A stretch of 50,092 nucleotides of DNA, taken from assembly GCA_000708835.1 (NCBI GenBank), contig DF237593.1, positions 1-50,092 of the forward strand, given 5' to 3'. Each line of letters begins with the position of its first letter. Positions within the stretch are counted from its first letter, which is position 1. Under the pieces are notes generated by a model. It saw only the letters and a list, made by a program, of their open reading frames with translations. It did not search any database and was not told the DNA's origin. Origin of the DNA: Klebsormidium nitens. Taxonomy: Eukaryota; Plantae; Klebsormidiophyceae. Of the stretch, positions 1 to 50,075 are shown one piece after another. A program made the position numbers and the translations under genes.

Positions 1-799
1 GGTGATCCGGTGGCTTTTCTAGTTCAATACACCTGGGCCTACTCCCTCAAGATTGTGGCAGACCCCAGCGCAAAATTCCGCTGGAAAATATTTTGGAGCG
101 ATACATATGTAATGGTCGATAATGGTACTTTTTAGCAGGTAACACTAGGTCTGCCGGAAGGATAAAACGTTTCATAATTAACTTTTCGGCGTCGAAGGTG
201 CCGAAATCAAATAGCAGTACGGTATTTCCAAATCAGCTTTCTGGCTACGTCGTACCTATTAGATGTTGAATTCTGAGTCGGTATACCGATTCTGAGTGGG
301 TCGGCTGTGGCACCTCATCCGAGCAGCGGCCGCGCCTGCTTGAAAACAAGCGGCACGCGCGCCTCTACTGCTTTTTTGACCTCTGTCAAACTTTGGGTGC
401 ATTTAATTTCAGGTCCCAATATGACGATGTGGTACAGACATTTCATCAAAATTCTGCAGTAGAAAGCGGCTTCTACTTGCGGAGGTTCTTGTGGCGACGA
501 TCGGCGTTTTCTGGAACTCACATCGAGGAAATCGAGGAAAAGTTGAAATTATACGCTGATACATAAACCAAGGGCTATTATTACTCCAATTTTCCGAATG
601 CGAAAAATCAATGCCAAAATGTTGCGGACTCGGTGTGAGCTGTGAAGAAGCGTGCAAGATCCGCAAGAAGCAAAGAAAGCAACTTCAACTTCAAGTTCAA
701 GTTCAAGCAAGACAAATTGGGCTTCAGAGCTTGAATCCACTGTCCGCTCTGGCAGCCGCCTTCTTACGGGGCCCTCGTTGGCCGTATGAGCAGCCATCC

Positions 800-3700
800 A
801 TGGCTATTGCAGCCTTTATTCCTACAGCAAGCAGCACTTTTTGCTCAAGCGCTGGCCTGCACATTGGTTCAACTAGCGCTTGGCCACACACATGGTTTTC
901 CCCCTTCCAAAGCTTTCCGTCTTTTCTTGCACCGTATGGGACCATCAATAGAGAGAAGGATGTAGTGGAGGATCGGCTGCAGAAAGGGCGAAGCCGAACA
1001 GCCCCTGCAAGAAAGCCCACGGAGATCTCAGCAGTTGGCAACCAAGTGGTTGCAGAGTTGGAATTGCCACAACAAGTAGACTCGGCAAATGCTCTTGAGC
1101 TACCACCAGCTATTGAATCCACCCCGCTTCTTCATTCCTCAAAAGACAGCCATCTGTCCACGACAACCTGTGCCAAGTCTGGCAGTAATTCCCCAGCCCT
1201 GTTGGTTAACGGGTGTCAGCATTCAGAACGACGCGTTGCCAGAAGGGGAATGCTGTCATTACTGGGGCTGGGAGCTGTAGGGGAAGCTGGAAAAGCTATT
1301 GCTGGCCCGTTCATTTTTGATCCTCGGTGAGAATTGGCACTGATGAAATGGTGGTGTGGTTGCAGTAGCCATATTTCAACCACATATTGACTTGGTACTA
1401 ACATTCATGTCGGTGGATTCAACCAGAATTCTAGCAGTAAAAGTGAATGGGGCTATTGTGGAGCCTTGCTTTATGTGAGGAAGTTTGTACATGTAAAGTA
1501 ATGGCATCCTGTGAGTCATTTTCAAGCTGTTTGCAATCGTAAGAAGGCCATGAAACAAACGTGAACACATTCAACGCCAACAAGGGCCTTTCTGCACGAA
1601 TTCGATTCCATGTCTAGCACAAGGTCACCCTATCAGTCAAGCAAGTCCTGTTGTTCAATCCTCTTGAGGAGAGTGATAGTTGTGCCTTACAGACATCGTT
1701 CAACATGAAGTCTGGCCACCAGCTTGCAAGCTTTCACGGAGAGTCAGACTCATAGCTGCCGATTACCAAGATTTCAAGCTTGTCTGCAGCTATTGTCACC
1801 TTCTCTTTCACCATCTTTTGTTTTCTCAGTGCCAACGTTGACCTGACGCCATCCGGGTTCAGAGTGTGCTTTCCTTGTGAATCTCAAGGGTGCAACTTTC
1901 AGAAGAGAAGCTCGAGCTTCAAGGGGTTCCAGCGTCTGTCTCAAATACCACCCTGCGCAGTTATACAACACAAGCATGAGTCTCTGGGCTGTACCAATGA
2001 CTGAGCCACACAGTACGCAATAAATTGTTGCACTCATTCAACTTCATTGCACAAAAAAAACTCCAGGAATTGTCAACAAATCCAAGCCTGCTATACATGG
2101 AGCCATCACTGGCTATTTTCATCCCAAGCTTTTTCGTGTGACTTGGAAGACAACGGTCGTAAACAGGATGGAGCAGAATCCTGTGGTGGCTTGGATTTGC
2201 GACTTGATTGATATGCTCCCCTCTGCAGAGCAGCCCTCTGCAGTGATGGCCGCTTCAGTACCGATGAGTCAGGGTGCATCTTTGCCAATCAGCGGCTCTT
2301 CTACCGCGCTGGACGAGAGATCTATATAGAGCAGGTAAGCTTTGAAATTGGGAAGGTTCGCTCTTTTCAAAGACAGTCTGGTCTCTCATTTCGAATCGGT
2401 AGAGGGAAAGAGAATCTAAGCAAACAAGGCTGTGAGCGAGGTACAGTAACAGTCTGTTGTAAACCCCTCAAAAAGCAAGAAAGTACAAGCGGCGACGGGT
2501 GCAACTTCTGAGACTTGTCTGGCTCCGAATCTCTGTGACAAAGGGTGTTCACAGCTACTTCCCTCTGCTGATAGCTTCTCTTGTGGCCCGCTCATCTCTC
2601 AACTCTCGGCTGACCAGAGTTCCTGTTATTGGTGAACAAAAACAAGTTACGACATTTATTGCGGCCCTCAATTTCTGCAGTTATATGCTCACCATTTTGA
2701 CAGCAAAAGCATCGAATCACAAAAATCACATTATCCTTCCTCACCCTCCAAGGGAAGAGATAAAAACGCAGGTCGGAAGTATCAATGAAGCAAGGCGTTG
2801 AAATGTGCTACTTTACTTGCTAGGGGGTTGCTAGTAACACGCTCATTTCTTCACACAGAGGTTTGGCCAGAAAGGGAGCCGCTCCACAGGCGCTGCCGTA
2901 TGGGAAGCCAATCTAGTACTGACTAGGTACGTCTTTAGCCGCTCTCCGTTGACTTTTCTTGGCCAAAGAGCTCGGAGCCTGATCTTGAGGACATGCGACT
3001 TCAACGGTTCAATCGGAACTCCCCTGCCGAATTCTGCTTCGTAGGGAAGGTTTATGCCGTTCAACTCCCGCTCTATCTCTTACGTGACGGAACGTCAAGT
3101 GGCACAGGTCGGACCTTTGCGCAAATTTTGGTCGAGGAAAACCCACTCTCATTTGCAACCTGCTTCTGGCCACGTTTGCAGGTATATGGAGACGCTCACG
3201 CCGTCGTACTGGAAGCGGAAACGGGTGATCGAACTAGGCACGGGCACGGGTTTCGCCGCCATCACCGCCGCCATGCTGGGTGCTGCAGACGTGACTGCGA
3301 CCGATGGGGACGACAGGTGCTTGTTTCTCTAGGTACCTGCTTCTGGTTCCCGTTCCTAACCTCCTTTCTTCTCGGCTGTCGTTGCGCGGATTACAGATCA
3401 GTTGAGACTGACCTTAAGACGATCTTGAGAACCAGACTGTCTTTAGCCGCTCTCGCCACTGGATTCAGAACTATTCGCGGTGGGCTCTTTTCCATTAAGC
3501 ACTATCCTTAGTGTTTTTATCATTGATACCATTTCAGCCTCTCGATATTTCAACGATTCCTGAATTCATAGGTCTCGCAGTATCTTTAAAGATAGCTTTT
3601 GTATGGTCAAGGAGATTGTTTACATAAGTGAAGGTGCCGCACTCCGCTATTGGCATGTATGTCCGGCCGCCGTTATGCTGCCCACTTCGAAAGGTGCCCG

Positions 3701-6325
3701 TCGGAAATTTCTGACGCGAGTCCCTCTCTGAAAAGAATGCGGTCTCTGTGGTCTTTAAGGGCACTTATGGTAGGATTATAGTGAAAGCTGCGACTTCTCA
3801 GGAGTCGATGCCAAAAGCAGGAAGGATCTTCCGGGAACCAAAAAGCTAGTCGGGGATTTGTATATTTTTTGGAGACGCAGCATCAATTGGGCTGTACGAT
3901 TGTACGATTTTGAAGCACCCAGTAAAGCCACCTCCTTTCGTATAGTCGCTCTTGGAGCCGGCAAGTGAAGCTCGCTGCCGTTCTTTGCTGAGGGCAAACC
4001 TGATCTCAGCATATCTATTGATGTCAGTCAGATGATTGCCCCGTTGATTGCAACAGTGGACTTCTACCTTAATGCACTTTGGCAAGTCTTTTGAAGAATG
4101 AGGCGAGGGCGTAGCCGCCCTTGTGAAACTTTCGCTTAAAACCCACATGCAACCTGGCCCCGAAGCTGACACTGCGAAAGAGACGCCAAAGGGTGCCTGC
4201 CAACTGAGTTTCCGACGGTGTCTCCATTTTGCAGGGTGCTGGAACTGGCTGCCAAGAACTTCGAAGCCAACGAGGCAGCTTTCGGATCCGACTTGTCGAC
4301 CTACTTGGCGCAGCTGCGATGGGGGAGCAGTCGAGACGAACTTGAAGAGGCGGGGATACGACCGACGTATGACGTCATTGTCGGCGCCGATCTGGTGAGC
4401 TGTGACGGTGCGCGGCGTCATAAGTGCCCGGCTTTGCCGCTATTCAGACCGTTATTCGCTTTAGAAGCTGCCAGGGGGTCTGTGAGCTAACCTCTCGTTT
4501 GCCAAAGGTGTCAAAGCAAATGTGAGAGCCCTTCGGAATGTGGCGTCACCCGTCCAAAGCTTGCCACGCTGCACGCTCTTGCAACAATCTGAACAGTGCT
4601 CGTTCCGACACCCCGAGGGTCCGTTTGCAAGAGTCGTTCTCGAGAGCTTTCACGAGACGGCCTAAGGCTCGAGAAACTTGAGTGGTTCTAATGGGCGCTG
4701 CAGCATGCGTAACGGGTGCGATTTACATGGGACAGCGGGGGGGCAAAATGGACCCAAGATCAGTTCGCTTTGATACTCAGTTATCAAGACGCATTTGTTT
4801 TTCGCTCTGCCTCAATGGGGATCCGAGCTTGAAAGCGAATGCGACTTTCGACTGACTGCTGTGACCACTGCTTGAAGACCTACTACAAGGACAACATCTA
4901 TCCGCTCGTCGTCACGTTGGCCGATCTCAGGTAGGGAGCCTTCTACAGCTCGTTTCGGAACCCTCGTGGGGGGATAGCGCGGTCTTGCTTCTCGTTCTCA
5001 TCCACGGCACTTACAAGGCTTTTACAGATGGCGCTGTAATCGGTGCGTAAAAGAAAACAGAATGCGTGAGACTCAGAAAGGTTGCTTTCAAGTGCGCTTC
5101 CATTTGAAATTTTGGAAGAGTCGCATCCAGTTTGAGAGCAGGCTCTGACAATAATTGACATGCTATTGTCAATTCTTTTCTCGTCCCTCGGCGAGCACAC
5201 TAGCTCCGTCCATACAGAGGCTGTGTGCGGTGACCTTTCAGCTCCTGTGGGCTCGCCCTATTATCTGGGCGGCAGACGGAGACAAAAGCAGATGGTGCTA
5301 AGATGTTCAAAGGGTTGTATTGTTTTTCTGCTCGCGAGAAAGTATACCATTATTGATAAACCCTTCACTATGTAGAGCCCCGAGAGTGCGATAGGGTTGA
5401 TCCGACGGTTTCCTCACACACATGAGAGTACTGCTGACAATATGAAGCCGTCTTTGCAGTTCTCCGGATACCGACATCTTCTTGGCGCACAAGCAGCGGC
5501 AGGAGGAGAACGAAACGTACTTGCACGAGCAGCTGGCGACCTTTTTCGACTGGGAGGTGAGTGCACGGTCGCCCGTTTTCTGGATGTACGAACTAGAGGC
5601 GCGGGTTTGTGATTCGTCCCGTCGCTGGTGAAGCGCATCCTGGCAGTTGACTGCCTGCGTCGTAGAGCTTGGTGTTGGGTTGCGGGTTAGGGAAAACGTC
5701 GCCTCTTACTCCAACTGTCCGCGGTTTGCAACCGAAGCGGTCGACAGAGGCGCTGCCGATGCCCCGGTTTCACGATGGTGCATGCCGGGACATCGAGCCG
5801 GGATGGGTTGGATAAGCGGTGTTTTGGACGGGCGGGCTCCTTGTTCGGGTCGTTGATTGGCATATCACGAGCATTTCTCACCGTTGCTCTTCGGCCACTC
5901 GCTTGTATCTCGTTGGAGTAGACGTGAGGTGTAAGGGTTCTGTAAGGCAGTTTAGTTGCCGTTCACTGTCCTGACACGCCTTGGGCGTTGGAGCATCCAG
6001 GCTGCACTCCGAGAGCTCATTGCCCATGGTTGGGGAGTGACAATATTGCAAACAGCGTCATATGATCAAGTCACTGGTCTGTGCGGTGCCGCCTTATTTC
6101 GGAGGCACTTTCAAACCAAGGTCAGCAGGTCATGTTCGGACCTTGCTGAGGTCAGTCGCATTTGCTCAACTCGACCATCTTTATAGATGCGTACGCGCAT
6201 TTTCAAACAGCCCTCATATTGGTTATTGTCTTGCTTTTGTCCAGGAGATTCGAGGAAACGAAAGGGGGCTAAGTTGGGGCAAAGATCATCCGAGCGTTGT
6301 GATTCTACGGCTACGTAAGCGGTGA
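800..6325 (+). CDS. METTL21/Methyltransf_16-family SAM-dependent (protein-lysine) methyltransferase with N-terminal plastid/Tat-like targeting region; 8 exons: 800-1326, 2229-2334, 2859-2926, 3182-3316, 4235-4394, 4878-4930, 5460-5556, 6245-6325
   Basis: All junctions are GT..AG with matching phases. The spliced product contains STGAAVWEANLVL, motif I RVIELGTGTGFAAI, VTATDG, LRWG, YDVIVGADLTY (DxxY) and IFLAHKQR, which are hallmarks of this family. The start could alternatively be ATG 611. Confidence 0.85.
1241..1303 (+). other. Putative twin-arginine (Tat) thylakoid transfer peptide RRGMLSLLGLGAVGEAGKAIA
   Basis: RR-x-hydrophobic motif, Gly/Leu/Ala-rich core, a basic residue near the C-terminal end and an A-x-A cleavage site. 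It is preceded by a Ser/Ala-rich N-terminus (MAIAAFIPTASSTFCSSAG). Confidence 0.5.
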
Positions 6326-7140
6326 CCTGTTGACTGAACTGCTTGATCAGATTGATTGATGCAAATCGCATGGAACAACGGAAGTTCGGACGTCTTGAAT
6401 TTATATCCTCTTAACATGCTATCAACATGACTTGCATGTTCATGTTGCAAGCCCATGGCAGCACACGTGCTGTATTCTTGTGGTACTTTGACTTACATTC
6501 CATGATCTGGCAGACTACCAGTGGGTTGAGAAAGCTATATACTAGGATCGCTTCGACAGAGCATTAAGCTTTGTTCGACGCGTCCATGTTCAAAGATGTA
6601 GTAGCGACGTCGATCCCCGCCAGAACTTCCGGCCCTGCCTGATTTTACTTGATCGATATCGACACTGGCAGATCACACTGAGTACGTCACGCGAAACGCT
6701 GTTGTGCTTGGCATCGAGCTGCTCACTTGCATGTGAGGCTTGCACTCAAATTTGTCAATGACGCCGTGCGGTGTACTACTGAAAGCCGCAGTTGCACGCA
6801 TGCTGTTCATACCCTGATCGTTTCGATCGGCTTGTATAGTCAATATCGTACTTTATCTCTTCTCGATAATCCAGTCCTGTAAATCCAACTTGCATGCAAC
6901 AAAGCAGCTTGCATCCTTGGATAGATTTTCCTGTCTACATGTCTACTAGTAAGCAAGAAAACCGCGGCCATAACCATCATTCGTTCTAAGATCTTTAAGC
7001 CCTGAAAGAGTCGTCGTTGACGAGCGTACCCGCATGTCATAAACATCCGTACAATACTATGCGACTTTGAGTCTAAGTTGCATCAATAGACTACAAGTCC
7101 AACAGGCTTGTGACTCTCAAATCCAAAATTAATTATCTAT

Positions 7141-8469
7141 CTAACCAAACAACCGTATCACTGTGCCGATAGCTTTGTTGCAAATGGGGCATCTTTTTCT
7201 GTCCTTACGGACTTTGCGCCCACACTCGAAGCACATCCGGTGCCCACATGGCACAAGAGCAGCATCCTTTGGCTTTGCAAAGCAAATGCAACAGTTCGCC
7301 CCTTCAGGCTGAAGCGCCATGTGCGTGTTGCTTCTTAGATGTTGGTCCAGGAAGGCCTGTGAGGTGAAGGTGATGCCGCACGGAGCACAGTGATGAGTGT
7401 GTAAGGGAGAACTTAAGTGCTGTTGGAGGGAGGTCGGGGTGGCAAACTCTCGGTTGCACTCTTCACAGCGGTGAACATGTGCTGGGGAACTCTGGTGCTG
7501 ACGAAGGGCTTGTTTTGAATCAAACGTCCTATCACACTTGTTGCAAGAAAAGACTGGGGTGTTATGGGCGGAGGACGTCTTAAGATGCTGCTGCAGTGCT
7601 TGCTCCGTATCAAATTCACGGTCGCAAGATTCACAATAGGCAAGGGGGTGGAACTCGTCCCAATGCTCCTCCAAGGCAGCTTCACCAATGCACTCAACCC
7701 CGCACTCTTCACAAGCTATGACTCTGTGTTCGGGGGATTCCCTAAGGTGGTGTTGTAGCTCTTCTGCAGTGTCAAACTCAAGATCGCAGGGTTCACAATA
7801 GGGATCAGGATGAAAAAGGTCCATGTGCTCCCCTAAGGCTTCCGCGCCAAAGCAGCGCGCCCCACACTCTTCGCAGGGCAGGATGACATGAACCGTTGCT
7901 TCTCTCAGGTGCTGCTGCAAAGCTGCCTCCGTATTGAACTCCAAGTCGCAGTCTTCGCACCAGAACACCGGGTGGAACTTCTCCATGTGCCTGTCCAGCG
8001 CTGCTACGCCCACACATTCTACTCGGCATACAGCACAATTGTACACCCTATGCACCGAGGACTCTTTCAGGTGCTGTTGCAGTGCCGCATTTGTGCCAAA
8101 CTCTCGGTCGCAAGGCACGCAGTAGGGAAGGGGGTGGTTTGAGTCCATGTGCTCCTCCAGGGCCGCTCCGCCCTTGCATTGAGTGCCGCACTCCGCACAT
8201 GCTGCAACTCTGTGGATTGGTGACTCTCTAAGGTGCTGCTGCAAGGCCCCGTCTGAGTTGAATTTCCGGTCACATAGCTCGCAGTAGGATTGGGGGTGGT
8301 ACAAGGCAAGGTGGTTCTCCAGGGCTGCCGCACCCGCGCTCTCAAAACCACACTCATTACAAGCATAAACCCTGTGGACAGGAGAGGAGTGCAGATGCTG
8401 CTGCAGAGCGCCATCTGTGCCAAACTCCCGGTGGCATTGCTGGCAGTAAGAAGAGCGAGAGTCCCACAT
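7141..8469 (-). CDS. Intronless 442-aa protein with 14 tandem C2H2 zinc fingers and a C-terminal C3HC4 RING (putative E3 ubiquitin ligase)
   Basis: Repeats of CxxC-x12-H-x4-6-H (e.g. CDREFGTNAALQQHLKESSVH). C-terminus is CCICFAKPKDAALVPCGHRMCFECGRKVRKDRKRCPICNKAIGTVIRLF (IAP/zf-C3HC4_3-like RING). Confidence 0.92.
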   Translation of the reverse strand: MWDSRSSYCQQCHREFGTDGALQQHLHSSPVHRVYACNECGFESAGAAALENHLALYHPQSYCELCDRKFNSDGALQQHLRESPIHRVAACAECGTQCKGGAALEEHMDSNHPLPYCVPCDREFGTNAALQQHLKESSVHRVYNCAVCRVECVGVAALDRHMEKFHPVFWCEDCDLEFNTEAALQQHLREATVHVILPCEECGARCFGAEALGEHMDLFHPDPYCEPCDLEFDTAEELQHHLRESPEHRVIACEECGVECIGEAALEEHWDEFHPLAYCESCDREFDTEQALQQHLKTSSAHNTPVFSCNKCDRTFDSKQALRQHQSSPAHVHRCEECNREFATPTSLQQHLSSPLHTHHCAPCGITFTSQAFLDQHLRSNTHMALQPEGANCCICFAKPKDAALVPCGHRMCFECGRKVRKDRKRCPICNKAIGTVIRLFG

Positions 8470-28603: not shown

Positions 28604-29586
28604 NNNNNNNNNNNNNNNNNNNNNNNNNNNNNNNNNNNNNNNNNNNNNNNNNNNNNNNNNNNNNNNNNNNNNNNNNNNNNNNNNNNNNNNNNNNNNNNNN
28701 NNNNNNNNNNNNNNNNNNNNNNNNNNNNNNNNNNNNNNNNNNNNNNNNNNNNNNNNNNNNNNNNNNNNNNNNNNNNNNNNNNNNNNNNNNNNNNNNNNNN
28801 NNNNNNNNNNNNNNNNNNNNNNNNNNNNNNNNNNNNNNNNNNNNNNNNNNNNNNNNNNNNNNNNNNNNNNNNNNNNNNNNNNNNNNNNNNNNNNNNNNNN
28901 NNNNNNNNNNNNNNNNNNNNNNNNNNNNNNNNNNNNNNNNNNNNNNNNNNNNNNNNNNNNNNNNNNNNNNNNNNNNNNNNNNNNNNNNNNNNNNNNNNNN
29001 NNNNNNNNNNNNNNNNNNNNNNNNNNNNNNNNNNNNNNNNNNNNNNNNNNNNNNNNNNNNNNNNNNNNNNNNNNNNNNNNNNNNNNNNNNNNNNNNNNNN
29101 NNNNNNNNNNNNNNNNNNNNNNNNNNNNNNNNNNNNNNNNNNNNNNNNNNNNNNNNNNNNNNNNNNNNNNNNNNNNNNNNNNNNNNNNNNNNNNNNNNNN
29201 NNNNNNNNNNNNNNNNNNNNNNNNNNNNNNNNNNNNNNNNNNNNNNNNNNNNNNNNNNNNNNNNNNNNNNNNNNNNNNNNNNNNNNNNNNNNNNNNNNNN
29301 NNNNNNNNNNNNNNNNNNNNNNNNNNNNNNNNNNNNNNNNNNNNNNNNNNNNNNNNNNNNNNNNNNNNNNNNNNNNNNNNNNNNNNNNNNNNNNNNNNNN
29401 NNNNNNNNNNNNNNNNNNNNNNNNNNNNNNNNNNNNNNNNNNNNNNNNNNNNNNNNNNNNNNNNNNNNNNNNNNNNNNNNNNNNNNNNNNNNNNNNNNNN
29501 NNNNNNNNNNNNNNNNNNNNNNNNNNNNNNNNNNNNNNNNNNNNNNNNNNNNNNNNNNNNNNNNNNNNNNNNNNNNNNNNNNNNNN
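28604..29586. other. Assembly gap (983 N)
   Basis: Run of N. Confidence 1.
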
Positions 29587-43131: not shown

Positions 43132-43821
43132 NNNNNNNNNNNNNNNNNNNNNNNNNNNNNNNNNNNNNNNNNNNNNNNNNNNNNNNNNNNNNNNNNNNNN
43201 NNNNNNNNNNNNNNNNNNNNNNNNNNNNNNNNNNNNNNNNNNNNNNNNNNNNNNNNNNNNNNNNNNNNNNNNNNNNNNNNNNNNNNNNNNNNNNNNNNNN
43301 NNNNNNNNNNNNNNNNNNNNNNNNNNNNNNNNNNNNNNNNNNNNNNNNNNNNNNNNNNNNNNNNNNNNNNNNNNNNNNNNNNNNNNNNNNNNNNNNNNNN
43401 NNNNNNNNNNNNNNNNNNNNNNNNNNNNNNNNNNNNNNNNNNNNNNNNNNNNNNNNNNNNNNNNNNNNNNNNNNNNNNNNNNNNNNNNNNNNNNNNNNNN
43501 NNNNNNNNNNNNNNNNNNNNNNNNNNNNNNNNNNNNNNNNNNNNNNNNNNNNNNNNNNNNNNNNNNNNNNNNNNNNNNNNNNNNNNNNNNNNNNNNNNNN
43601 NNNNNNNNNNNNNNNNNNNNNNNNNNNNNNNNNNNNNNNNNNNNNNNNNNNNNNNNNNNNNNNNNNNNNNNNNNNNNNNNNNNNNNNNNNNNNNNNNNNN
43701 NNNNNNNNNNNNNNNNNNNNNNNNNNNNNNNNNNNNNNNNNNNNNNNNNNNNNNNNNNNNNNNNNNNNNNNNNNNNNNNNNNNNNNNNNNNNNNNNNNNN
43801 NNNNNNNNNNNNNNNNNNNNN
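43132..43821. other. Assembly gap (690 N)
   Basis: Run of N between the LINE fragment and the gypsy leader. Confidence 1.
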
Positions 43822-47200: not shown

Positions 47201-50075
47201 TCTGGGACACGTGATTGACGCCGCAGGCTGCCGCCCAGACCCTGATAAGATCAAGTGGGTGAAAGAATTCCGCCCTCCAAGGAACATTACCTTGCTCCGT
47301 GCCTTTCTCGGACTCTGCGGTTACTACCGCCGCTACGTGGCCAACTTCTCTACCAAGGCCGCCCCTCTTACAGCCTTGCTGCGGAAAAACACTCCCTTTG
47401 TCTGGGGCCCTGAACAACAGGAGGCTTTTGAGCTGCTCAAATGGCACCTCACGAACCCTCCCACCCTCGCCCGCCCCGACTTTCTTCGGCCGTTCATCTT
47501 GAAGACCGACTACTCTGGCGTTGGCATTGGAGCTATTCTCGCCCAACACGATGAGGCGTCCGCCGAACACGTCATTGCCTACGCCAGTAAGGCGCTGACC
47601 CCCGCTGAACGCAACTACTCCGTCACCGAAGGCGAATGCCTGGCGGTTGTCTGGGGCATCAAGTACTTCCGCCCCTACTTACATGGTACCCGCTTTACCC
47701 TGGTCACCGACCACCACTCGCTACAGTGGCTCATGAAGAGCCGCGACTTGAACTCCCGGCTCATGCGCTGGTCGCTCAAGCTGCAGGAATACACATTCGA
47801 CATTGAATACCGGCCAGGCCCCCGTCATGCTGACGTGGACGCACTCAGCCGTATTCCGCCCAACCCAAACCCTGATGCCCTCCCTGAACTTTGCGCCTTC
47901 ATGGCTGGAGACGAGGGCGTCTCCCCTCTTAGGGTGGAGGAAAGCAACGCAGGGGAGTACGACGACTTGCCCAGCGAGACTCCTGAGACACGCACCGTAC
48001 CGAGGCACATCCGGTTCGACTCGTCGGATTCTGAGGACGAACCCCAAGAAGGAGACGACGATCCACACATGGAGCAGACAGAGGGCTCCGGAGACATGAA
48101 CATAACCCGTCCAAGACTCGCAGACATCATGGACGATCACTATGTGGTCGATTTCCTACGAGACGGAACGATCCCCACCGTCCTCTCCTCCAAAGAACGC
48201 AGACGTGTTATGAAGCGAGCGAAGAGCTTTGTAATGGAGAACGGAACGCTCCGAACTCGCCCAACCACAAAGCACCCTACCGGACGTGTCATCCCCACCC
48301 TTGAGGAGCGCAAAAGGATCCTAGAGTGGGGACATAAAGGGACGAACCACATGGGCGCCGCCAAACTCGAGAAGCTGGTAGCTGAGCAAAACTATTGGTG
48401 GAGCAACCTTCGCGCAGATTGCGTCCGCACTTGTCAGGACTGCGAGGACTGCCGCATCGCCACCACAGAATTCCGAACGCCCCGCACCGAACTTGAACCC
48501 GTGAAGGTGAAACCCGGGGTAGGCCGTGCCTGGTCCATCGATCTTATGGGCGGCTTTCCAAAAACCGAACGGGGAAATCGACTCGTTATCATCGCCGTTG
48601 AACGACTGACCCGCTGGGTTGAAGCTCGAGCCATCCCGAACAAGAAGCCACCCACCGTTGCACGGTTCATCTTGGAAGAAATCATTGCACGACACACGAT
48701 CCCAGAGGAGATTTCGACCGACCAANNNNNNNNNNNNNNNNNNNNNNNNNNNNNNNNNNNNNNNNNNNNNNNNNNNNNNNNNNNNNNNNNNNNNNNNNNN
48801 NNNNNNNNNNNNNNNNNNNNNNNNNNNNNNNNNNNNNNNNNNNNNNNNNNNNNNNNNNNNNNNNNNNNNNNNNNNNNNNNNNNNNNNNNNNNNNNNNNNN
48901 NNNNNNNNNNNNNNNNNNNNNNNNNNNNNNNNNNNNNNNNNNNNNNNNNNNNNNNNNNNNNNNNNNNNNNNNNNNNNNNNNNNNNNNNNNNNNNNNNNNN
49001 NNNNNNNNNNNNNNNNNNNNNNNNNNNNNNNNNNNNNNNNNNNNNNNNNNNNNNNNNNNNNNNNNNNNNNNNNNNNNNNNNNNNNNNNNNNNNNNNNNNN
49101 NNNNNNNNNNNNNNNNNNNNNNNNNNNNNNNNNNNNNNNNNNNNNNNNNNNNNNNNNNNNNNNNNNNNNNNNNNNNNNNNNNNNNNNNNNNNNNNNNNNN
49201 NNNNNNNNNNNNNNNNNNNNNNNNNNNNNNNNNNNNNNNNNNNNNNNNNNNNNNNNNNNNNNNNNNNNNNNNNNNNNNNNNNNNNNNNNNNNNNNNNNNN
49301 NNNNNNNNNNNNNNNNNNNNNNGGCCGCGAATTTTGGAAGGAAGTACAAGACATTCTGGAAGGATACGGCATCATGCACATCACGACTTCCGCATACCAC
49401 CCCGAGGGGAATGGCCTCTCAGAACGAACCCTACGAACACTCCTACACGGCCTGATGAAGAAGGCAGCACGTGACCCAAAGAATTGGGACCTCGTTTTCC
49501 CTCTGGTACTGATGGGCTACCGGATTAGCGTTCAGGCCAGCGTGGGGCATTGCCCCTTCAAGCTTATGCATGGGCGTGACCCCGTCCTACCTATCTCCTT
49601 CAAGGATTTTGCGCCAGAGCTCGACATCAACGAGGAGGCTGACTGGAGCCTCAACGACACCGCGGAACACCTCGTGCAGACCATGACGACCTTGGAGGAA
49701 TTACACAAAGATGCCCTGAAGAACCTTGAGAAGGCCCAGGAGAAGAACAAGCTTGACTTTAACAGGAGGCATCGCACCTTCGAACACACCAAGGATGGGG
49801 CAAACGCCCCCTTTGCCATTGGAGACTACGTACTAGCCCGAGTGGCCAAGCGAAGCAAGATCCACCCAGACGCGGATAAGGGTACCTATCGAGTTACACG
49901 CTTCACAGGCAAAGGCTGCGTGGAAGTGGAAGACGCAAAAGGAACCAAGTACTCCTACAACATGAACAACGTCGAGCTATATGCCAAGAAGGAAGACGTC
50001 GACGAGGCAGCTCTACAAGACATGCTTAGAGAGGAAGAAGCACCACGAACCGTTTTGGAGGACCAAAACATCTAG
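44214..50075 (+). CDS. Single-frame Gag-Pol polyprotein (about 1750 aa excluding the N run)
   Basis: Gag (WLRAF..YA..CDW, F.NGL), zinc knuckle CYKCGKEGHISRDC (44973-45014), protease AILDSGAS, RT YPLPRIDDLL / YQFKVMPFGLCNAP / YLDD (47061), RNase H TDYSGVGIGAIL..ERNYS.TEGEC..TDH, integrase H..H..C..C, WSIDLMG, STDQ|GREF, GNGLSER and PF.IGD.V. First ATG at 44214; the ORF track starts at GTG 44193. Confidence 0.95.
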   Translation: MDSLAALSHLQFLEYDGRKDPKDWLRAFNKYAIACDWSNDKRLNMAFVCLKGEADKWLESEEDTELWTWEEFSTKLTERFSRLRSKLNIMHDFENRKQRKDESARTFLVELRHLASKLPDKVSDDALLYRFINGLNRPLQQRVHLRMPQTLKEAEEAADYFEANEEKFANNYTESARPFNGPRRFDRPKQEEQKSGIPSPTPSRPAQAETRSQNPLQAAVDDVTKRLGDLRLLAQGSNTSAGSAGTVRRNPRICYKCGKEGHISRDCRADTAALTDTLDEEEDWAARYAAKQAQLEAEEHVNVTSMEAFSGNMYDPYMTDTAAAMKRTRGPDDEDEGPRTKRTPFPMNLPRRTDTPMPTAQTPETPTRQEPPNPAPTSAAQRYRAAQNRSNIPRTTYQGGQQYSIVNQLGATTAKIDFRTLLDISPKARNDLLRYLTAADSGQTASLSETNTVAMSNSLPTRYTVARCKVDIFNQPVEAILDSGASATLMGQMLARKHDLLDMLQPPICSFRTSSGDRDVPLGILPKFPIRVGEFDITLDVHVVRASNYDLLLGSDFFHQVGATLNYVDRSMRYRLDQNHYASIPIAFDTSTSVMYAEASPMLPEPDMAEAEPPADILPIQEEDDTVPPLISDDSDDESYYDSESDDDEAPPPLVGEDSDDDYYSDDEDFTPLPQANSSEHTECDPADDDLLDEVTEEFAATLQADYATYKLNHPPVPPPDRIRTCGEWKASITAVVNFDEIMENIRSIRRGVDLTDAQRDSLFKLLTDFEGSFQWKGRKFGFTDLVKHHIRTGNALPVKQRAYRLSQREKKVIEQAIAEMLPDDIIEPSNGPWASPPIITGKKDGGDRFCVDLRAVNNLTERDSYPLPRIDDLLDTIGKASWFSSIDLKSGYWQIALAEEDRPKTAFITPWGLYQFKVMPFGLCNAPSTFQRLMDVVLRPYIGKFCAVYLDDILIFSSTYEEHLEHVRLVLEALSAANLRIHPKKSSFALRETLFLGHVIDAAGCRPDPDKIKWVKEFRPPRNITLLRAFLGLCGYYRRYVANFSTKAAPLTALLRKNTPFVWGPEQQEAFELLKWHLTNPPTLARPDFLRPFILKTDYSGVGIGAILAQHDEASAEHVIAYASKALTPAERNYSVTEGECLAVVWGIKYFRPYLHGTRFTLVTDHHSLQWLMKSRDLNSRLMRWSLKLQEYTFDIEYRPGPRHADVDALSRIPPNPNPDALPELCAFMAGDEGVSPLRVEESNAGEYDDLPSETPETRTVPRHIRFDSSDSEDEPQEGDDDPHMEQTEGSGDMNITRPRLADIMDDHYVVDFLRDGTIPTVLSSKERRRVMKRAKSFVMENGTLRTRPTTKHPTGRVIPTLEERKRILEWGHKGTNHMGAAKLEKLVAEQNYWWSNLRADCVRTCQDCEDCRIATTEFRTPRTELEPVKVKPGVGRAWSIDLMGGFPKTERGNRLVIIAVERLTRWVEARAIPNKKPPTVARFILEEIIARHTIPEEISTDQXXXXXXXXXXXXXXXXXXXXXXXXXXXXXXXXXXXXXXXXXXXXXXXXXXXXXXXXXXXXXXXXXXXXXXXXXXXXXXXXXXXXXXXXXXXXXXXXXXXXXXXXXXXXXXXXXXXXXXXXXXXXXXXXXXXXXXXXXXXXXXXXXXXXXXXXXXXXXXXXXXXXXXXXXXXXXXXXXXXXXXXXXXXXXXXXXXXXXXXGREFWKEVQDILEGYGIMHITTSAYHPEGNGLSERTLRTLLHGLMKKAARDPKNWDLVFPLVLMGYRISVQASVGHCPFKLMHGRDPVLPISFKDFAPELDINEEADWSLNDTAEHLVQTMTTLEELHKDALKNLEKAQEKNKLDFNRRHRTFEHTKDGANAPFAIGDYVLARVAKRSKIHPDADKGTYRVTRFTGKGCVEVEDAKGTKYSYNMNNVELYAKKEDVDEAALQDMLREEEAPRTVLEDQNI
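48726..49322. other. Assembly gap (597 N) inside the integrase core
   Basis: Run of N; the flanks read TDQ and GREF. Confidence 1.

What the first reader, a model, noticed from the sequence alone, without database searches (positions are those of the whole stretch)
800..6325. METTL21-type methyltransferase apparently routed to the thylakoid lumen by a Tat signal
Seen: exon 1 ends RRGMLSLLGLGAVGEAGKAIA-GPFIFDPR and splices in frame (phase 2) to AALCSDGRFSTDESGC and then a complete Methyltransf_16 domain. Known: RR-x-hydrophobic plus AxA is the bipartite signal of lumenal proteins such as PsbP; Tat exports folded, often cofactor-loaded proteins; METTL21-family enzymes are usually cytosolic or nuclear lysine methyltransferases. 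Inference: this could be a lumenal protein methyltransferase imported with bound SAM, with a Cys pair able to form a lumenal disulfide. I know of no established lumenal SAM-dependent protein methylation. Caveat: the RR lies 147 codons after ATG 800, which is long for a transit peptide.
Basis: partly seen in the sequence, partly recalled or inferred. Interest (0 to 1): 0.72.

Follow-up and report, generated by a model that had tools for sequence, protein, structure and literature searches.

The report
Algal methyltransferase with thylakoid-lumen export leader
A Klebsormidium nitens nuclear gene encodes a protein-lysine methyltransferase with a leader that resembles a chloroplast transit peptide followed by a twin-arginine export signal, and many distant algal relatives carry the same signal, so this enzyme family probably works inside the thylakoid lumen, where no methyltransferase is known.

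Summary
RNA contigs from four runs in four studies join exon 1 (ATG 800, ending at 1326) to 2229 and on through the methyltransferase exons. All seven introns are GT..AG, and the product is 408 aa. The window is Klebsormidium nitens. The public model KFL_006440010 starts at Met151, so it lacks the twin arginine and the first 150 residues. A second Klebsormidium-like genome keeps the whole exon-1 reading frame and its ATG, but not Met151. Residues 151-408 are a complete METTL21-type domain (Methyltransf_16, 97 bits) under strong purifying selection (dN/dS about 0.06).

New evidence comes from the relatives. A 98%-supported split puts all 18 rows with RR immediately before a hydrophobic stretch, K. 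nitens included, on one side of the tree. The 65 ordinary leaderless-type METTL21 relatives on the other side have none. The RR leaders fit polar-R-R-x-hydrophobic-hydrophobic. Many sit behind an ER-type signal peptide of secondary-plastid algae (cryptophyte, pelagophyte, dinoflagellate). A cysteine pair follows the leader.

Lumen targeting is therefore well supported in silico, but it has not been shown by experiment. Weak points are KR instead of RR in the nearest relative, a very long leader, and no known SAM supply in the lumen. I found no paper describing such an enzyme. The scan has not reported this on other DNA.

The parts
627..799 (+). 5' untranslated region. RNA contigs reach back to about 627-629. 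It includes an out-of-frame upstream ATG at 786 that opens a 59-codon overlapping frame.
   Evidence: Contig overhangs (the record starts 72-74 nt before 700); ATG list. The upstream ATG is not conserved in L001.
800..1326 (+). Exon 1: the whole leader (residues 1-175 plus 2 bases).
   Evidence: 46% identical over its full length to ORF P0001 of a related genome.
800..949 (+). Residues 1-50: chloroplast transit-peptide-like N-terminus (MA..., 28% Ser/Thr, no acidic and no Lys/Arg residues).
   Evidence: Composition; dN/dS 0.53 against the relative. The targeting function is inferred, not tested.
950..1228 (+). Residues 51-143: charged spacer with no domain. The frame is kept but the amino-acid sequence is unconstrained.
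   Evidence: No Pfam hit. dN/dS 1.03, with all indels against the relative in frame.
1229..1246 (+). RRVARR: two arginine pairs (residues 144-145 and 148-149). The second directly precedes the hydrophobic core.
   Evidence: The relative has RRICKR.
1247..1282 (+). Hydrophobic core GMLSLLGLGAVG (residues 150-161).
   Evidence: Kyte-Doolittle mean 1.72 over 12 residues but only 1.24 over 19, which is too weak and short for a membrane span. pLDDT is below 50 in the model.
1283..1303 (+). c-region EAGKAIA (residues 162-168) with Ala-x-Ala. The predicted thylakoid processing site is after Ala168, before Gly169.
   Evidence: Sequence; identical in the relative. Cleavage is inferred.
2229..2334 (+). 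Exon 2: start of the mature protein, with the only two cysteines of the mature part, Cys180 (2239-2241) and Cys192 (2275-2277).
   Evidence: 35 of 35 residues are identical in the relative.
2859..2926 (+). Exon 3 (RFGQKGSRSTGAAVWEANLVLT).
3182..3316 (+). Exon 4: SAM-binding motif I VIELGTGTG (3225-3251) and the acidic Post-I residue (TATD).
   Evidence: Pfam PrmA and Methyltransf_16 hits on this exon alone; invariant columns.
4235..4394 (+). Exon 5: ends with GADL, the first half of the DxxY motif.
4878..4930 (+). Exon 6: begins TYY, completing D-L-T-Y.
5460..5556 (+). Exon 7.
6245..6325 (+). Exon 8 and the TGA stop (6323-6325).

Best explanation
The gene encodes a 408-residue precursor of a METTL21-type (seven-beta-strand, Methyltransf_16) protein-lysine methyltransferase, and the enzyme is delivered into the thylakoid lumen. 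Proposed path, with each step marked shown or inferred. (1) Translation starts at ATG 800 (shown by comparison with a related genome). (2) The Ser/Thr-rich, acid-free first 50 or so residues act as a stromal transit peptide, followed by a roughly 90-residue unconstrained spacer (inferred from composition and substitution rates). (3) In the stroma the methyltransferase domain folds, and residues 144-168 (RRVARR-GMLSLLGLGAVG-EAGKAIA) act as a twin-arginine signal for the chloroplast Tat translocase (inferred from the motif and from its recurrence in relatives). (4) The thylakoid processing peptidase cuts after AIA168 (inferred). (5) Cys180 and Cys192, the only cysteines of the mature protein, form a disulfide in the oxidising lumen (inferred). 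(6) The mature enzyme of about 240 residues, whose SAM-binding and DxxY motifs are intact and under strong purifying selection, methylates lysines of one or more lumenal proteins (inferred; the substrate and the source of SAM are unknown). K. nitens is the green-lineage member of a group of such enzymes that also occurs in algae with secondary plastids.
For: Transcript: the spliced contigs in three of the four runs link the leader exon to the catalytic exons.

Start codon: ATG 800 and the open frame are conserved in L001, whereas Met151 is not.

Enzyme: Methyltransf_16 at 97 bits. The closest solved structures are METTL21B, D, A and C, at E 5e-18 to 5e-12. The AlphaFold2 model has pLDDT above 90 for residues 41-258 of P0002. 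The mature exons are 95% identical to the relative, with dN/dS 0.056.

Signal: A-R-R-G-M-L, a 12-residue core (KD 1.72), a c-region with Lys, and AIA. The core has pLDDT below 50, so it is not predicted to be part of the fold. Residues 144-175 have dN/dS 0.21.

Family: 17 of 71 leader-bearing cluster representatives have RR within 5 residues before an uncharged hydrophobic run. Composition shuffles give 2.8 +/- 1.6 (maximum 10 in 1000), and K/R-swap shuffles give 9.9 (maximum 16). The KK, KR and RK counts are 0, 0 and 1. All 18 RR rows lie on one side of a 98* split and none lies among the 65 rows on the other side. Twenty-five RR leaders share polar-R-R-x-hydrophobic-hydrophobic, with positions +2 and +3 hydrophobic in 88% and +1 in 32%.

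Plastid context: 21 of 48 sequences on the RR side, against 2 of 58 on the other side, begin with an ER-type signal peptide. Examples include Hemiselmis rufescens P0174 (signal peptide ...ADA|F, then a transit region, then GRRDALLGASAMIVAGAPFAAAA) and P0010 (...GAAA|F ... SRRDLML).

Cysteine pair: 35 of 48 sequences on the RR side have at least 2 Cys before the domain, against 6 of 42 on the other side.
Against: No localisation predictor or experiment was available, so the transit-peptide call rests on composition only.

The RR lies 147 residues from the N-terminus, which is very long for a bipartite leader. Residues 51-143 contain 12% acidic residues and evolve neutrally.

In the nearest relative the arginine pair next to the core is KR. 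The RR it keeps is 5 residues further upstream and is followed by I-C-K-R, which is a poor Tat register.

Several relatives have a hydrophobic/AxA signal with one Arg or none (P0193, P0005, P0070, P0034, and the P0003/P0021 group). These fit Sec rather than Tat.

Some leaders in the P0041/P0175/P0176 group leave almost no room for a transit peptide between the ER signal and the RR.

No SAM pool, SAM transporter or methylated lumenal protein is known. Alban et al. 2014 (PMC3991674) never mention the lumen.

Only a few of the relatives could be given a taxon.
Confidence: 0.52

Rival explanations
1. The enzyme is lumenal but crosses the thylakoid membrane unfolded through the Sec pathway. The arginines are only the positive n-region of an ordinary lumen-targeting signal.
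For: The nearest relative has KR at the proximal pair. Green-looking, GC-rich relatives (P0193, P0005) and several others have a single Arg or none before a hydrophobic/AxA signal. A cysteine pair that is oxidised only after transport suits Sec as well.
Against: RR is strongly preferred over KK, KR and RK before the core across the family (17: 0: 0: 1), in the Tat register. The K. nitens core is weakly hydrophobic and Gly-rich, and the c-region carries Lys; by general knowledge of the pathway both favour Tat and disfavour Sec.
Confidence: 0.14
2. The enzyme is plastid-targeted but not lumenal. The hydrophobic stretch is a membrane tether or a protein-interaction segment, and the catalytic domain faces the stroma, where SAM and known methylated proteins are found.
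For: All plastid protein methyltransferases known so far act in the stroma (PMC3991674). SAM is available there. The h-region through the cysteine-pair segment is almost as conserved between the two Klebsormidium genomes as the enzyme itself, which is unusual for a discarded signal.
Against: The stretch is too short and too weakly hydrophobic for a span (19-residue KD mean 1.24) and is predicted disordered. With the positive charges on its N-terminal side, the C-terminal domain would be on the trans (lumenal) side. The idea explains neither the RR preference, nor the AxA, nor the cysteine pairs that mark this side of the tree.
Confidence: 0.15
3. The protein is not plastidial. Either translation starts internally (Met151, as in the public model), giving a short hydrophobic N-terminus that enters the secretory pathway, or the long leader directs the protein elsewhere, for example to mitochondria.
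For: The public annotation starts at Met151. An out-of-frame ATG at 786 precedes ATG 800. Residues 51-143 evolve neutrally, as untranslated sequence would.
Against: Met151 is Val in the relative, whose own internal Met sits at a different position. A 175-184-codon frame, its ATG and three in-frame indels are conserved in both genomes, with a stop 5 codons upstream of the ATG in the relative. The first 50 residues have dN/dS 0.53. Homologues in secondary algae carry plastid-type leaders, with a signal peptide cleavage site followed by Phe.
Confidence: 0.08

Closest known systems
Human METTL21A, B, C and D (including VCP-KMT and eEF1A-KMT3); Pfam Methyltransf_16; PDB 4qpn, 4lg1, 4lec, 4mtl
   Same: The same fold and motifs: motif I ELGTGTG, the acidic Post-I residue and D-x-x-Y. 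PDB sequence hits have E 5e-18 to 5e-12 over residues 46-254 of P0002. Atlas structure matches to METTL21C/D-named clusters have TM 0.69-0.72.
   Different: Those enzymes are cytosolic or nuclear and have no leader. This protein has a 168-residue leader with a Tat-type signal and a cysteine pair before the domain. It falls on the other side of a 98%-supported split from the leaderless-type relatives.
Thylakoid Tat (delta-pH pathway) passengers such as PsbP (OE23), PsbQ (OE17) and polyphenol oxidase, and the tripartite leaders of cryptophyte phycoerythrin alpha subunits (from general knowledge, not tested here)
   Same: The leader architecture: a stromal targeting part, then polar-R-R-x-hydrophobic-hydrophobic, a weakly hydrophobic core, a basic residue in the c-region, and Ala-x-Ala. 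In secondary algae an ER signal peptide is added in front.
   Different: The passenger is a SAM-dependent methyltransferase, a type of enzyme not known in the lumen. The K. nitens leader, with 147 residues before the RR, is about twice the usual length.
Known plastid protein methyltransferases: PrmA-like (At5g53920), LSMT-like, PPKMT1-3, and the CaMKMT-like candidate (Alban et al. 2014, PMC3991674)
   Same: Nuclear-encoded protein-lysine methyltransferases that are imported, or predicted to be imported, into plastids. PrmA-like and CaMKMT-like are also seven-beta-strand enzymes.
   Different: Those are stromal, soluble enzymes with simple transit peptides, and their known substrates (ribosomal protein L11, ATP synthase beta, aldolases) face the stroma. 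None has a second, lumen-type signal.
Chloroplast Rieske protein PetC (Tat-inserted, natural KR variant, uncleaved signal; from general knowledge)
   Same: It shows that a KR pair, as in the Klebsormidium relative, can still use the thylakoid Tat route and place the C-terminal domain in the lumen.
   Different: The Rieske signal is a true membrane anchor, whereas the core here is short and is followed by AxA.

Membership tests
Methyltransf_16 / METTL21-type seven-beta-strand lysine methyltransferases | Pfam PF10294 match above the gathering score over the whole domain | tested here: met
   97.1 bits against a cut-off of 21, profile positions 10-169 of 174.
Methyltransf_16 / METTL21-type seven-beta-strand lysine methyltransferases | SAM-binding motif I (E/D-x-G-x-G-x-G) and an acidic residue at the end of strand 2 | tested here: met
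   VIELGTGTG and TATD are present. E101, G103, G105 and D125 of P0002 are invariant or nearly so in alignments A1-A3.
Methyltransf_16 / METTL21-type seven-beta-strand lysine methyltransferases | D-x-x-Y/F motif after strand 4 (the lysine-binding site; assignment from general knowledge) | tested here: met
   GADLTYY is present. It aligns with GADIVY of METTL21B, and D181 is nearly invariant.
Methyltransf_16 / METTL21-type seven-beta-strand lysine methyltransferases | Rossmann-like seven-strand fold | tested here: met
   AlphaFold2 model with mean pLDDT 89 and alternating strands and helices. Atlas TM 0.69-0.77 to Methyltransf_16 clusters.
Methyltransf_16 / METTL21-type seven-beta-strand lysine methyltransferases | Lysine methylation activity on a protein substrate | not testable with these tools
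   Needs recombinant enzyme and labelled SAM.
Thylakoid Tat (cpTat) passenger | Twin arginine in the register polar-R-R-x-hydrophobic-hydrophobic directly before the core | tested here: met
   A-R-R-G-M-L at residues 147-152. The same register is seen in 25 related leaders. The nearest relative has K-R-T-V-L, so this is only partly conserved within the genus.
Thylakoid Tat (cpTat) passenger | Short, weakly hydrophobic core followed by a c-region with a basic residue and Ala-x-Ala | tested here: met
   GMLSLLGLGAVG (KD 1.72 over 12 residues, 1.24 over 19), then EAGKAIA|G.
Thylakoid Tat (cpTat) passenger | A preceding stromal transit peptide | tested here: inconclusive
   Residues 1-50 have 28% Ser/Thr and no acidic residue, and start with MA. 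No predictor could be run, and a 93-residue charged spacer follows.
Thylakoid Tat (cpTat) passenger | pH-gradient-dependent, RR-dependent transport of the folded protein, and presence in the lumen | not testable with these tools
   Needs import assays and lumen proteomics.
Proteins of complex (secondary) plastids, for the relatives | ER signal peptide whose cleavage site is followed by Phe or another aromatic residue, then a transit region | tested here: met
   P0174 (Hemiselmis rufescens) ...SIADA|FSP, P0010 ...GAAA|FSA, P0026 ...HALA|FRH. A signal-peptide-like N-terminus occurs in 21 of 48 sequences on the RR side against 2 of 58 on the other side. This was scored by a simple rule of my own, not by a trained predictor.

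The most novel reading that the evidence does not exclude
The thylakoid lumen of many algae, both green-lineage Klebsormidium and algae with red-derived secondary plastids, contains a dedicated SAM-dependent protein-lysine methyltransferase delivered by the Tat pathway. That would mean lumenal proteins are methylated in place and that SAM reaches the lumen, either bound to the folded enzyme during Tat transport or through an unknown thylakoid carrier. The enzyme may have been lost in land plants.
Probability: 0.4. Interest if true: 0.8.

Novelty: new variant of a known kind. Interest (0 to 1): 0.68.

Why it matters
The thylakoid lumen is usually treated as a small compartment with few enzymes and, as far as I know and as far as the library searches show, no SAM-dependent chemistry. 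A conserved, selectively maintained methyltransferase with a lumen-type leader in very different algae would add a new post-translational modification to the compartment that houses water oxidation, plastocyanin/cytochrome c6 electron transfer and photoprotection. It would also raise a concrete question about how SAM gets there. The claim can be tested directly with import assays and lumen proteomics. There is a practical point as well: the public K. nitens gene model is truncated by 150 residues, so any localisation prediction based on it would miss the signal.

Tried and rejected
Pfam on exon 1 alone found no domain; the only hit was a chance FbpC_C hit at E 0.15.

Word-index searches were too insensitive to say anything about land-plant orthologues. 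Exon 1 found only the relative's ORF and the truncated public model. P0002 found 6 proteins. Alignment A2 found 10 proteins.

The prokaryote genome scan gave nothing useful. This scan only sees close relatives, so it says nothing about a cyanobacterial origin.

The top-scoring hits of the exhaustive search (P0008, P0009, P0012-15, P0019) are tandem fusions of 2-6 leaderless methyltransferase domains. They score high only because of the repeated domains and are not close relatives.

Five library searches for a lumenal methyltransferase, lumenal SAM or METTL21 in thylakoids gave no relevant paper. The Synechocystis methylome paper mentions neither the lumen nor PsbO.

I looked for an embedded gene to explain the contigs that keep introns 5 and 6, and found no convincing ORF on either strand.

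The upstream in-frame ATG at 611 was rejected as the start. The contigs begin near 627, and the relative has a stop 5 codons before the conserved ATG.

Searches used exon references or the database protein P0002, which equals residues 151-408. No TargetP, TatP or PredAlgo was available.

Full report
**What is in the sequence**

The window is a Klebsormidium nitens contig. The database protein that matches it is "hypothetical protein KFL_006440010 [Klebsormidium nitens]", on a contig of exactly 50,092 bases.

On the + strand, ATG 800 opens a frame of 175 codons plus two bases, ending at 1326 before GTGAG. The acceptor at 2228/2229 completes an Arg codon and continues AALCSDGRFSTDESGC.

I laid assembled contigs of four public runs from four different studies on 700-6600. 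All four runs contain the 1326/2229 joint and six further joints, and every one is GT..AG. In three of the four runs (X2, X9, X12) single contigs of 1070-1167 nt run from exon 1, across exons 2-4, into exon 5; those of X2 and X12 begin upstream of ATG 800. Spliced joints cannot come from DNA, so these runs are RNA even though their records do not say so.

The gene has eight exons: 800-1326, 2229-2334, 2859-2926, 3182-3316, 4235-4394, 4878-4930, 5460-5556 and 6245-6325. The product is 408 residues.

**Which start codon**

The public model (P0002, 258 aa) begins at Met151, inside RRG-M-LSLL, so it lacks the arginines.

A contig from another sequencing run (L001, Logan SRR23617307) carries the same eight exons, with the mature exons 95% identical (218 of 229 residues). 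There the exon-1 frame is a 184-codon ORF (P0001), 46% identical to the K. nitens leader over its whole length. It has the same ATG context and a stop five codons upstream. Met151 is Val there.

Three indels between the two leaders are all in frame. The in-frame ATG at 611 in K. nitens lies upstream of where the RNA contigs start (about 627) and has no counterpart in the relative. ATG 800 is therefore the start, and the public model is truncated by 150 residues. An out-of-frame ATG at 786 precedes it in K. nitens only.

**The enzyme**

P0002, which equals residues 151-408, matches Pfam Methyltransf_16 at 97 bits over almost the whole profile.

Its closest solved relatives are human METTL21B, D, A and C, at E 5e-18 to 5e-12. 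Motif I (VIELGTGTG), the acidic Post-I residue (TATD) and the D-L-T-Y motif are all present.

An AlphaFold2 model built on an 81-sequence alignment has mean pLDDT 89. Residues 41-258 are above 90. Residues 18-40, the cysteine-pair segment, are near 60. Residues 1-17, the hydrophobic core of the putative signal, are below 50 with no secondary structure. The core is thus not predicted to be part of the fold or a membrane helix.

Against the relative, the mature exons have dN/dS of about 0.056 at dS 0.46, so this is a working protein under strong constraint.

**The leader**

- Residues 1-50 start with MA, are 28% Ser/Thr, and contain no acidic and no Lys/Arg residue. Their dN/dS is 0.53. This looks like a transit peptide, but that is a judgement from composition only.
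- Residues 51-143 are charged, hit no domain, and have dN/dS 1.03 while keeping the frame. They behave as an unconstrained spacer.
- Residues 144-175 have dN/dS 0.21. They read RRVARR-GMLSLLGLGAVG-EAGKAIA-GPFIFDP.

The core is 12 residues with a Kyte-Doolittle mean of 1.72, but the best 19-residue window reaches only 1.24, too low for a membrane span. A-R-R-G-M-L fits the Tat register polar-R-R-x-hydrophobic-hydrophobic. A Lys in the c-region followed by Ala-x-Ala is what thylakoid Tat signals usually show (general knowledge of the pathway).

**Do relatives keep the signal?**

The nearest relative keeps the core and c-region letter for letter but reads GRRICKRTVLSLM. The proximal pair is KR, and the conserved RR sits five residues further upstream. 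KR occurs in natural Tat substrates such as the chloroplast Rieske protein (general knowledge), but this still weakens the case within the genus.

The word-index searches found few relatives, so I ran the exhaustive HMMER search with P0002. It gave 6,738 hits, with the nearest single-domain proteins 45-49% identical.

Reading their N-termini showed the same kind of signal again and again, in sequences that are otherwise unalignable before the domain:

| Protein | Leader segment |
|---|---|
| P0010 | LSRRDLMLPAAAAVLAAGIAGP |
| P0171 | LSRRELFLQLPAVAAAGIVG |
| P0016 | LSRRTVIGVATTLLFPLLP...SYA |
| P0100 | LSRRGLFDAGAMGAGVTWFAMPSQVQA |
| P0017 | QQRRTILSAGLSIAAGN |
| P0174 | VGRRDALLGASAMIVAGAPFAAAA |
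| P0022 | ATRRAAGAALLAAWPAAAARA |
| P0041 | LDRRFFLAVALPGAALA |
| P0091 | ATRRLSLAISLASLVAMPSLPPPVWA |

There are others as well.

**Counts**

Among the 150 best cluster representatives, 71 are single-domain proteins of at most 460 aa that start with Met and have at least 30 residues before the point 55 residues upstream of motif I. Of these, 17 have RR within five residues before an uncharged hydrophobic run of at least 10 residues.

- Shuffling each leader's composition gives 2.8 +/- 1.6 (maximum 10 in 1000 shuffles).
- Permuting only which basic residues are K or R gives 9.9 +/- 1.8 (maximum 16).
- The same test with KK, KR and RK finds 0, 0 and 1.

A general positive n-region would not prefer RR so strictly.

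Aligning 25 such leaders on the RR gives Ser as the commonest residue at -1. Position +1 is mostly polar or small (32% hydrophobic), and positions +2 and +3 are 88% hydrophobic, mostly Leu and Phe. The selection rule required a hydrophobic run nearby, but it did not fix this register.

**Tree**

I built a maximum-likelihood tree of 121 domain sequences (IQ-TREE, quick mode). A split with 98% SH-aLRT support puts 65 rows on one side: 32 short, 26 with non-signal extensions and 7 truncated, with no RR leader among them. On the other side are 56 rows that hold all 18 RR rows, K. nitens included.

The closest neighbours of K. nitens are P0010/P0011, the P0024/P0017 group, and the P0041/22/33/47/175/176 group. 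Nearly all of those with complete N-termini bear RR. The tree is unrooted and many inner branches are weak, so I claim only the split, not an order of events.

**Two more features mark the RR side**

- 21 of 48 Met-start sequences begin with an ER-type signal peptide, against 2 of 58 on the other side. Several have a small-x-small cleavage site followed by Phe, the mark of proteins of complex plastids. The clearest case is Hemiselmis rufescens P0174, with signal peptide ...SIADA|F, a transit stretch, and then the RR signal. This is the tripartite architecture known for lumenal proteins of cryptophytes (general knowledge).
- 35 of 48 sequences have at least two cysteines in the segment just before the domain, against 6 of 42 on the other side. 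Many also have a second pair in a C-terminal tail (C-N-P-G-Y...C), which K. nitens lacks. The mature K. nitens protein has exactly two cysteines, Cys180 and Cys192.

Paired cysteines flanking a domain are what one expects in an oxidising compartment. This is an inference.

The only named taxa among the relatives are Hemiselmis rufescens (cryptophyte), Chrysophaeum taylorii (pelagophyte), Chrysotila carterae (haptophyte, no RR) and Biecheleria cincta (dinoflagellate). Most others come from marine transcriptomes or metagenomes and carry no taxon name.

**What this adds up to**

The most economical reading is that the RR side of the tree is a group of plastid METTL21-type enzymes exported into the thylakoid lumen, mostly by Tat, and that the K. 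nitens gene is its green-lineage member.

Shown here: the transcript, the start codon, the intact and constrained enzyme, the signal-like sequence, and its non-random recurrence in relatives.

Inferred: every step of targeting, cleavage after Ala168, the disulfide, the lysine substrate, and the SAM supply.

**Evidence against**

- The leader is about twice the usual length, and its middle evolves neutrally.
- The nearest relative has KR at the proximal pair.
- Several relatives have a lumen-type signal with one Arg or none: P0193 (SRALAGAAMSAVVGLGSAGAAMA|LP), P0005, P0070, P0034, and the P0003/P0021 group. The destination is therefore better supported than the route.
- Some leaders, such as P0041 and P0175, leave hardly any room for a transit peptide.
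- No lumenal SAM pool is known.

**Rivals**

These are Sec-dependent lumen import, a stromal enzyme tethered by the hydrophobic stretch, and internal initiation or non-plastid targeting. They are weighed in the Rival explanations section of this report.

**Comparison with what is known**

Membership in Methyltransf_16/METTL21 is met on every sequence and fold criterion I could test. Catalytic activity is untested.

Membership among thylakoid Tat passengers is met for the motif, the core and the c-region, inconclusive for the transit peptide, and untestable for transport.

Five full-text searches found no description of a lumenal protein methyltransferase, lumenal SAM or METTL21 in thylakoids. 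The survey of Arabidopsis chloroplast methylation (PMC3991674) lists only stromal-type enzymes and never mentions the lumen. A library search cannot prove absence.

I rate this a new variant of a known kind: a familiar enzyme family with a leader for a compartment where no such chemistry is known.

The scan's own notes hold only this same stretch, plus an unrelated note on a possible Tat-targeted Cu/Zn SOD elsewhere in this genome. I did not use either as evidence. The scan has not reported this enzyme on other DNA.

**Limits**

Everything on the mature part used P0002 or single-exon references. No localisation predictor was available. Taxon labels exist for only a handful of relatives. I could not determine whether land plants have a member.

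Noticed in passing
window 800-1249 compared with the public model KFL_006440010: The public K. nitens gene model starts at Met151 (1250) and omits 150 conserved-frame codons, including both arginine pairs. Localisation predictions made from the deposited protein would miss the leader.
   Followed up: yes
window 4365-4906 and 4901-5486: In all four RNA runs there are contigs that run straight through intron 5 and intron 6, alongside the spliced forms. The other introns are covered only by scattered low-depth pieces or not at all. Retaining intron 5 would end the frame after GADL plus 31 codons. No convincing ORF lies in these introns on either strand.
   Followed up: partly
window 786-962: An out-of-frame upstream ATG lies 14 nt before the start codon and opens a 59-codon overlapping frame. 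It is absent from the related genome, so it is probably not a conserved regulatory uORF.
   Followed up: partly
window 2229 and 2241: A second AG 12 nt downstream (ccctctgcag|tgatgg) would also splice in frame and would delete AALC, including Cys180. Only the 2229 acceptor appears in the contigs.
   Followed up: partly
window 7141-8469 (- strand); L001 6703-7902 (- strand): The downstream neighbour is an intron-free ORF of 442 aa with six zf-C2H2_jaz fingers and a C-terminal RING finger. The related genome has the same neighbour in the same orientation, so the locus is syntenic.
   Followed up: partly
window 28604-29586, 43132-43821, 48726-49322: Three runs of N (assembly gaps) account for the apparent low-GC troughs in the composition profile.
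   Followed up: yes
proteins P0008, P0012-P0015 (relatives, not in the window): Some eukaryotic proteins carry 2-6 tandem METTL21-type domains in one chain of up to 1,923 aa, without targeting leaders. Their origin and meaning are unknown.
   Followed up: partly
proteins P0010, P0022, P0047, P0175, P0176, P0050, P0174 (relatives): Many RR-side relatives end in a short tail with a second conserved cysteine pair (C-N-P-G-Y...C). The K. nitens protein lacks this tail.
   Followed up: no
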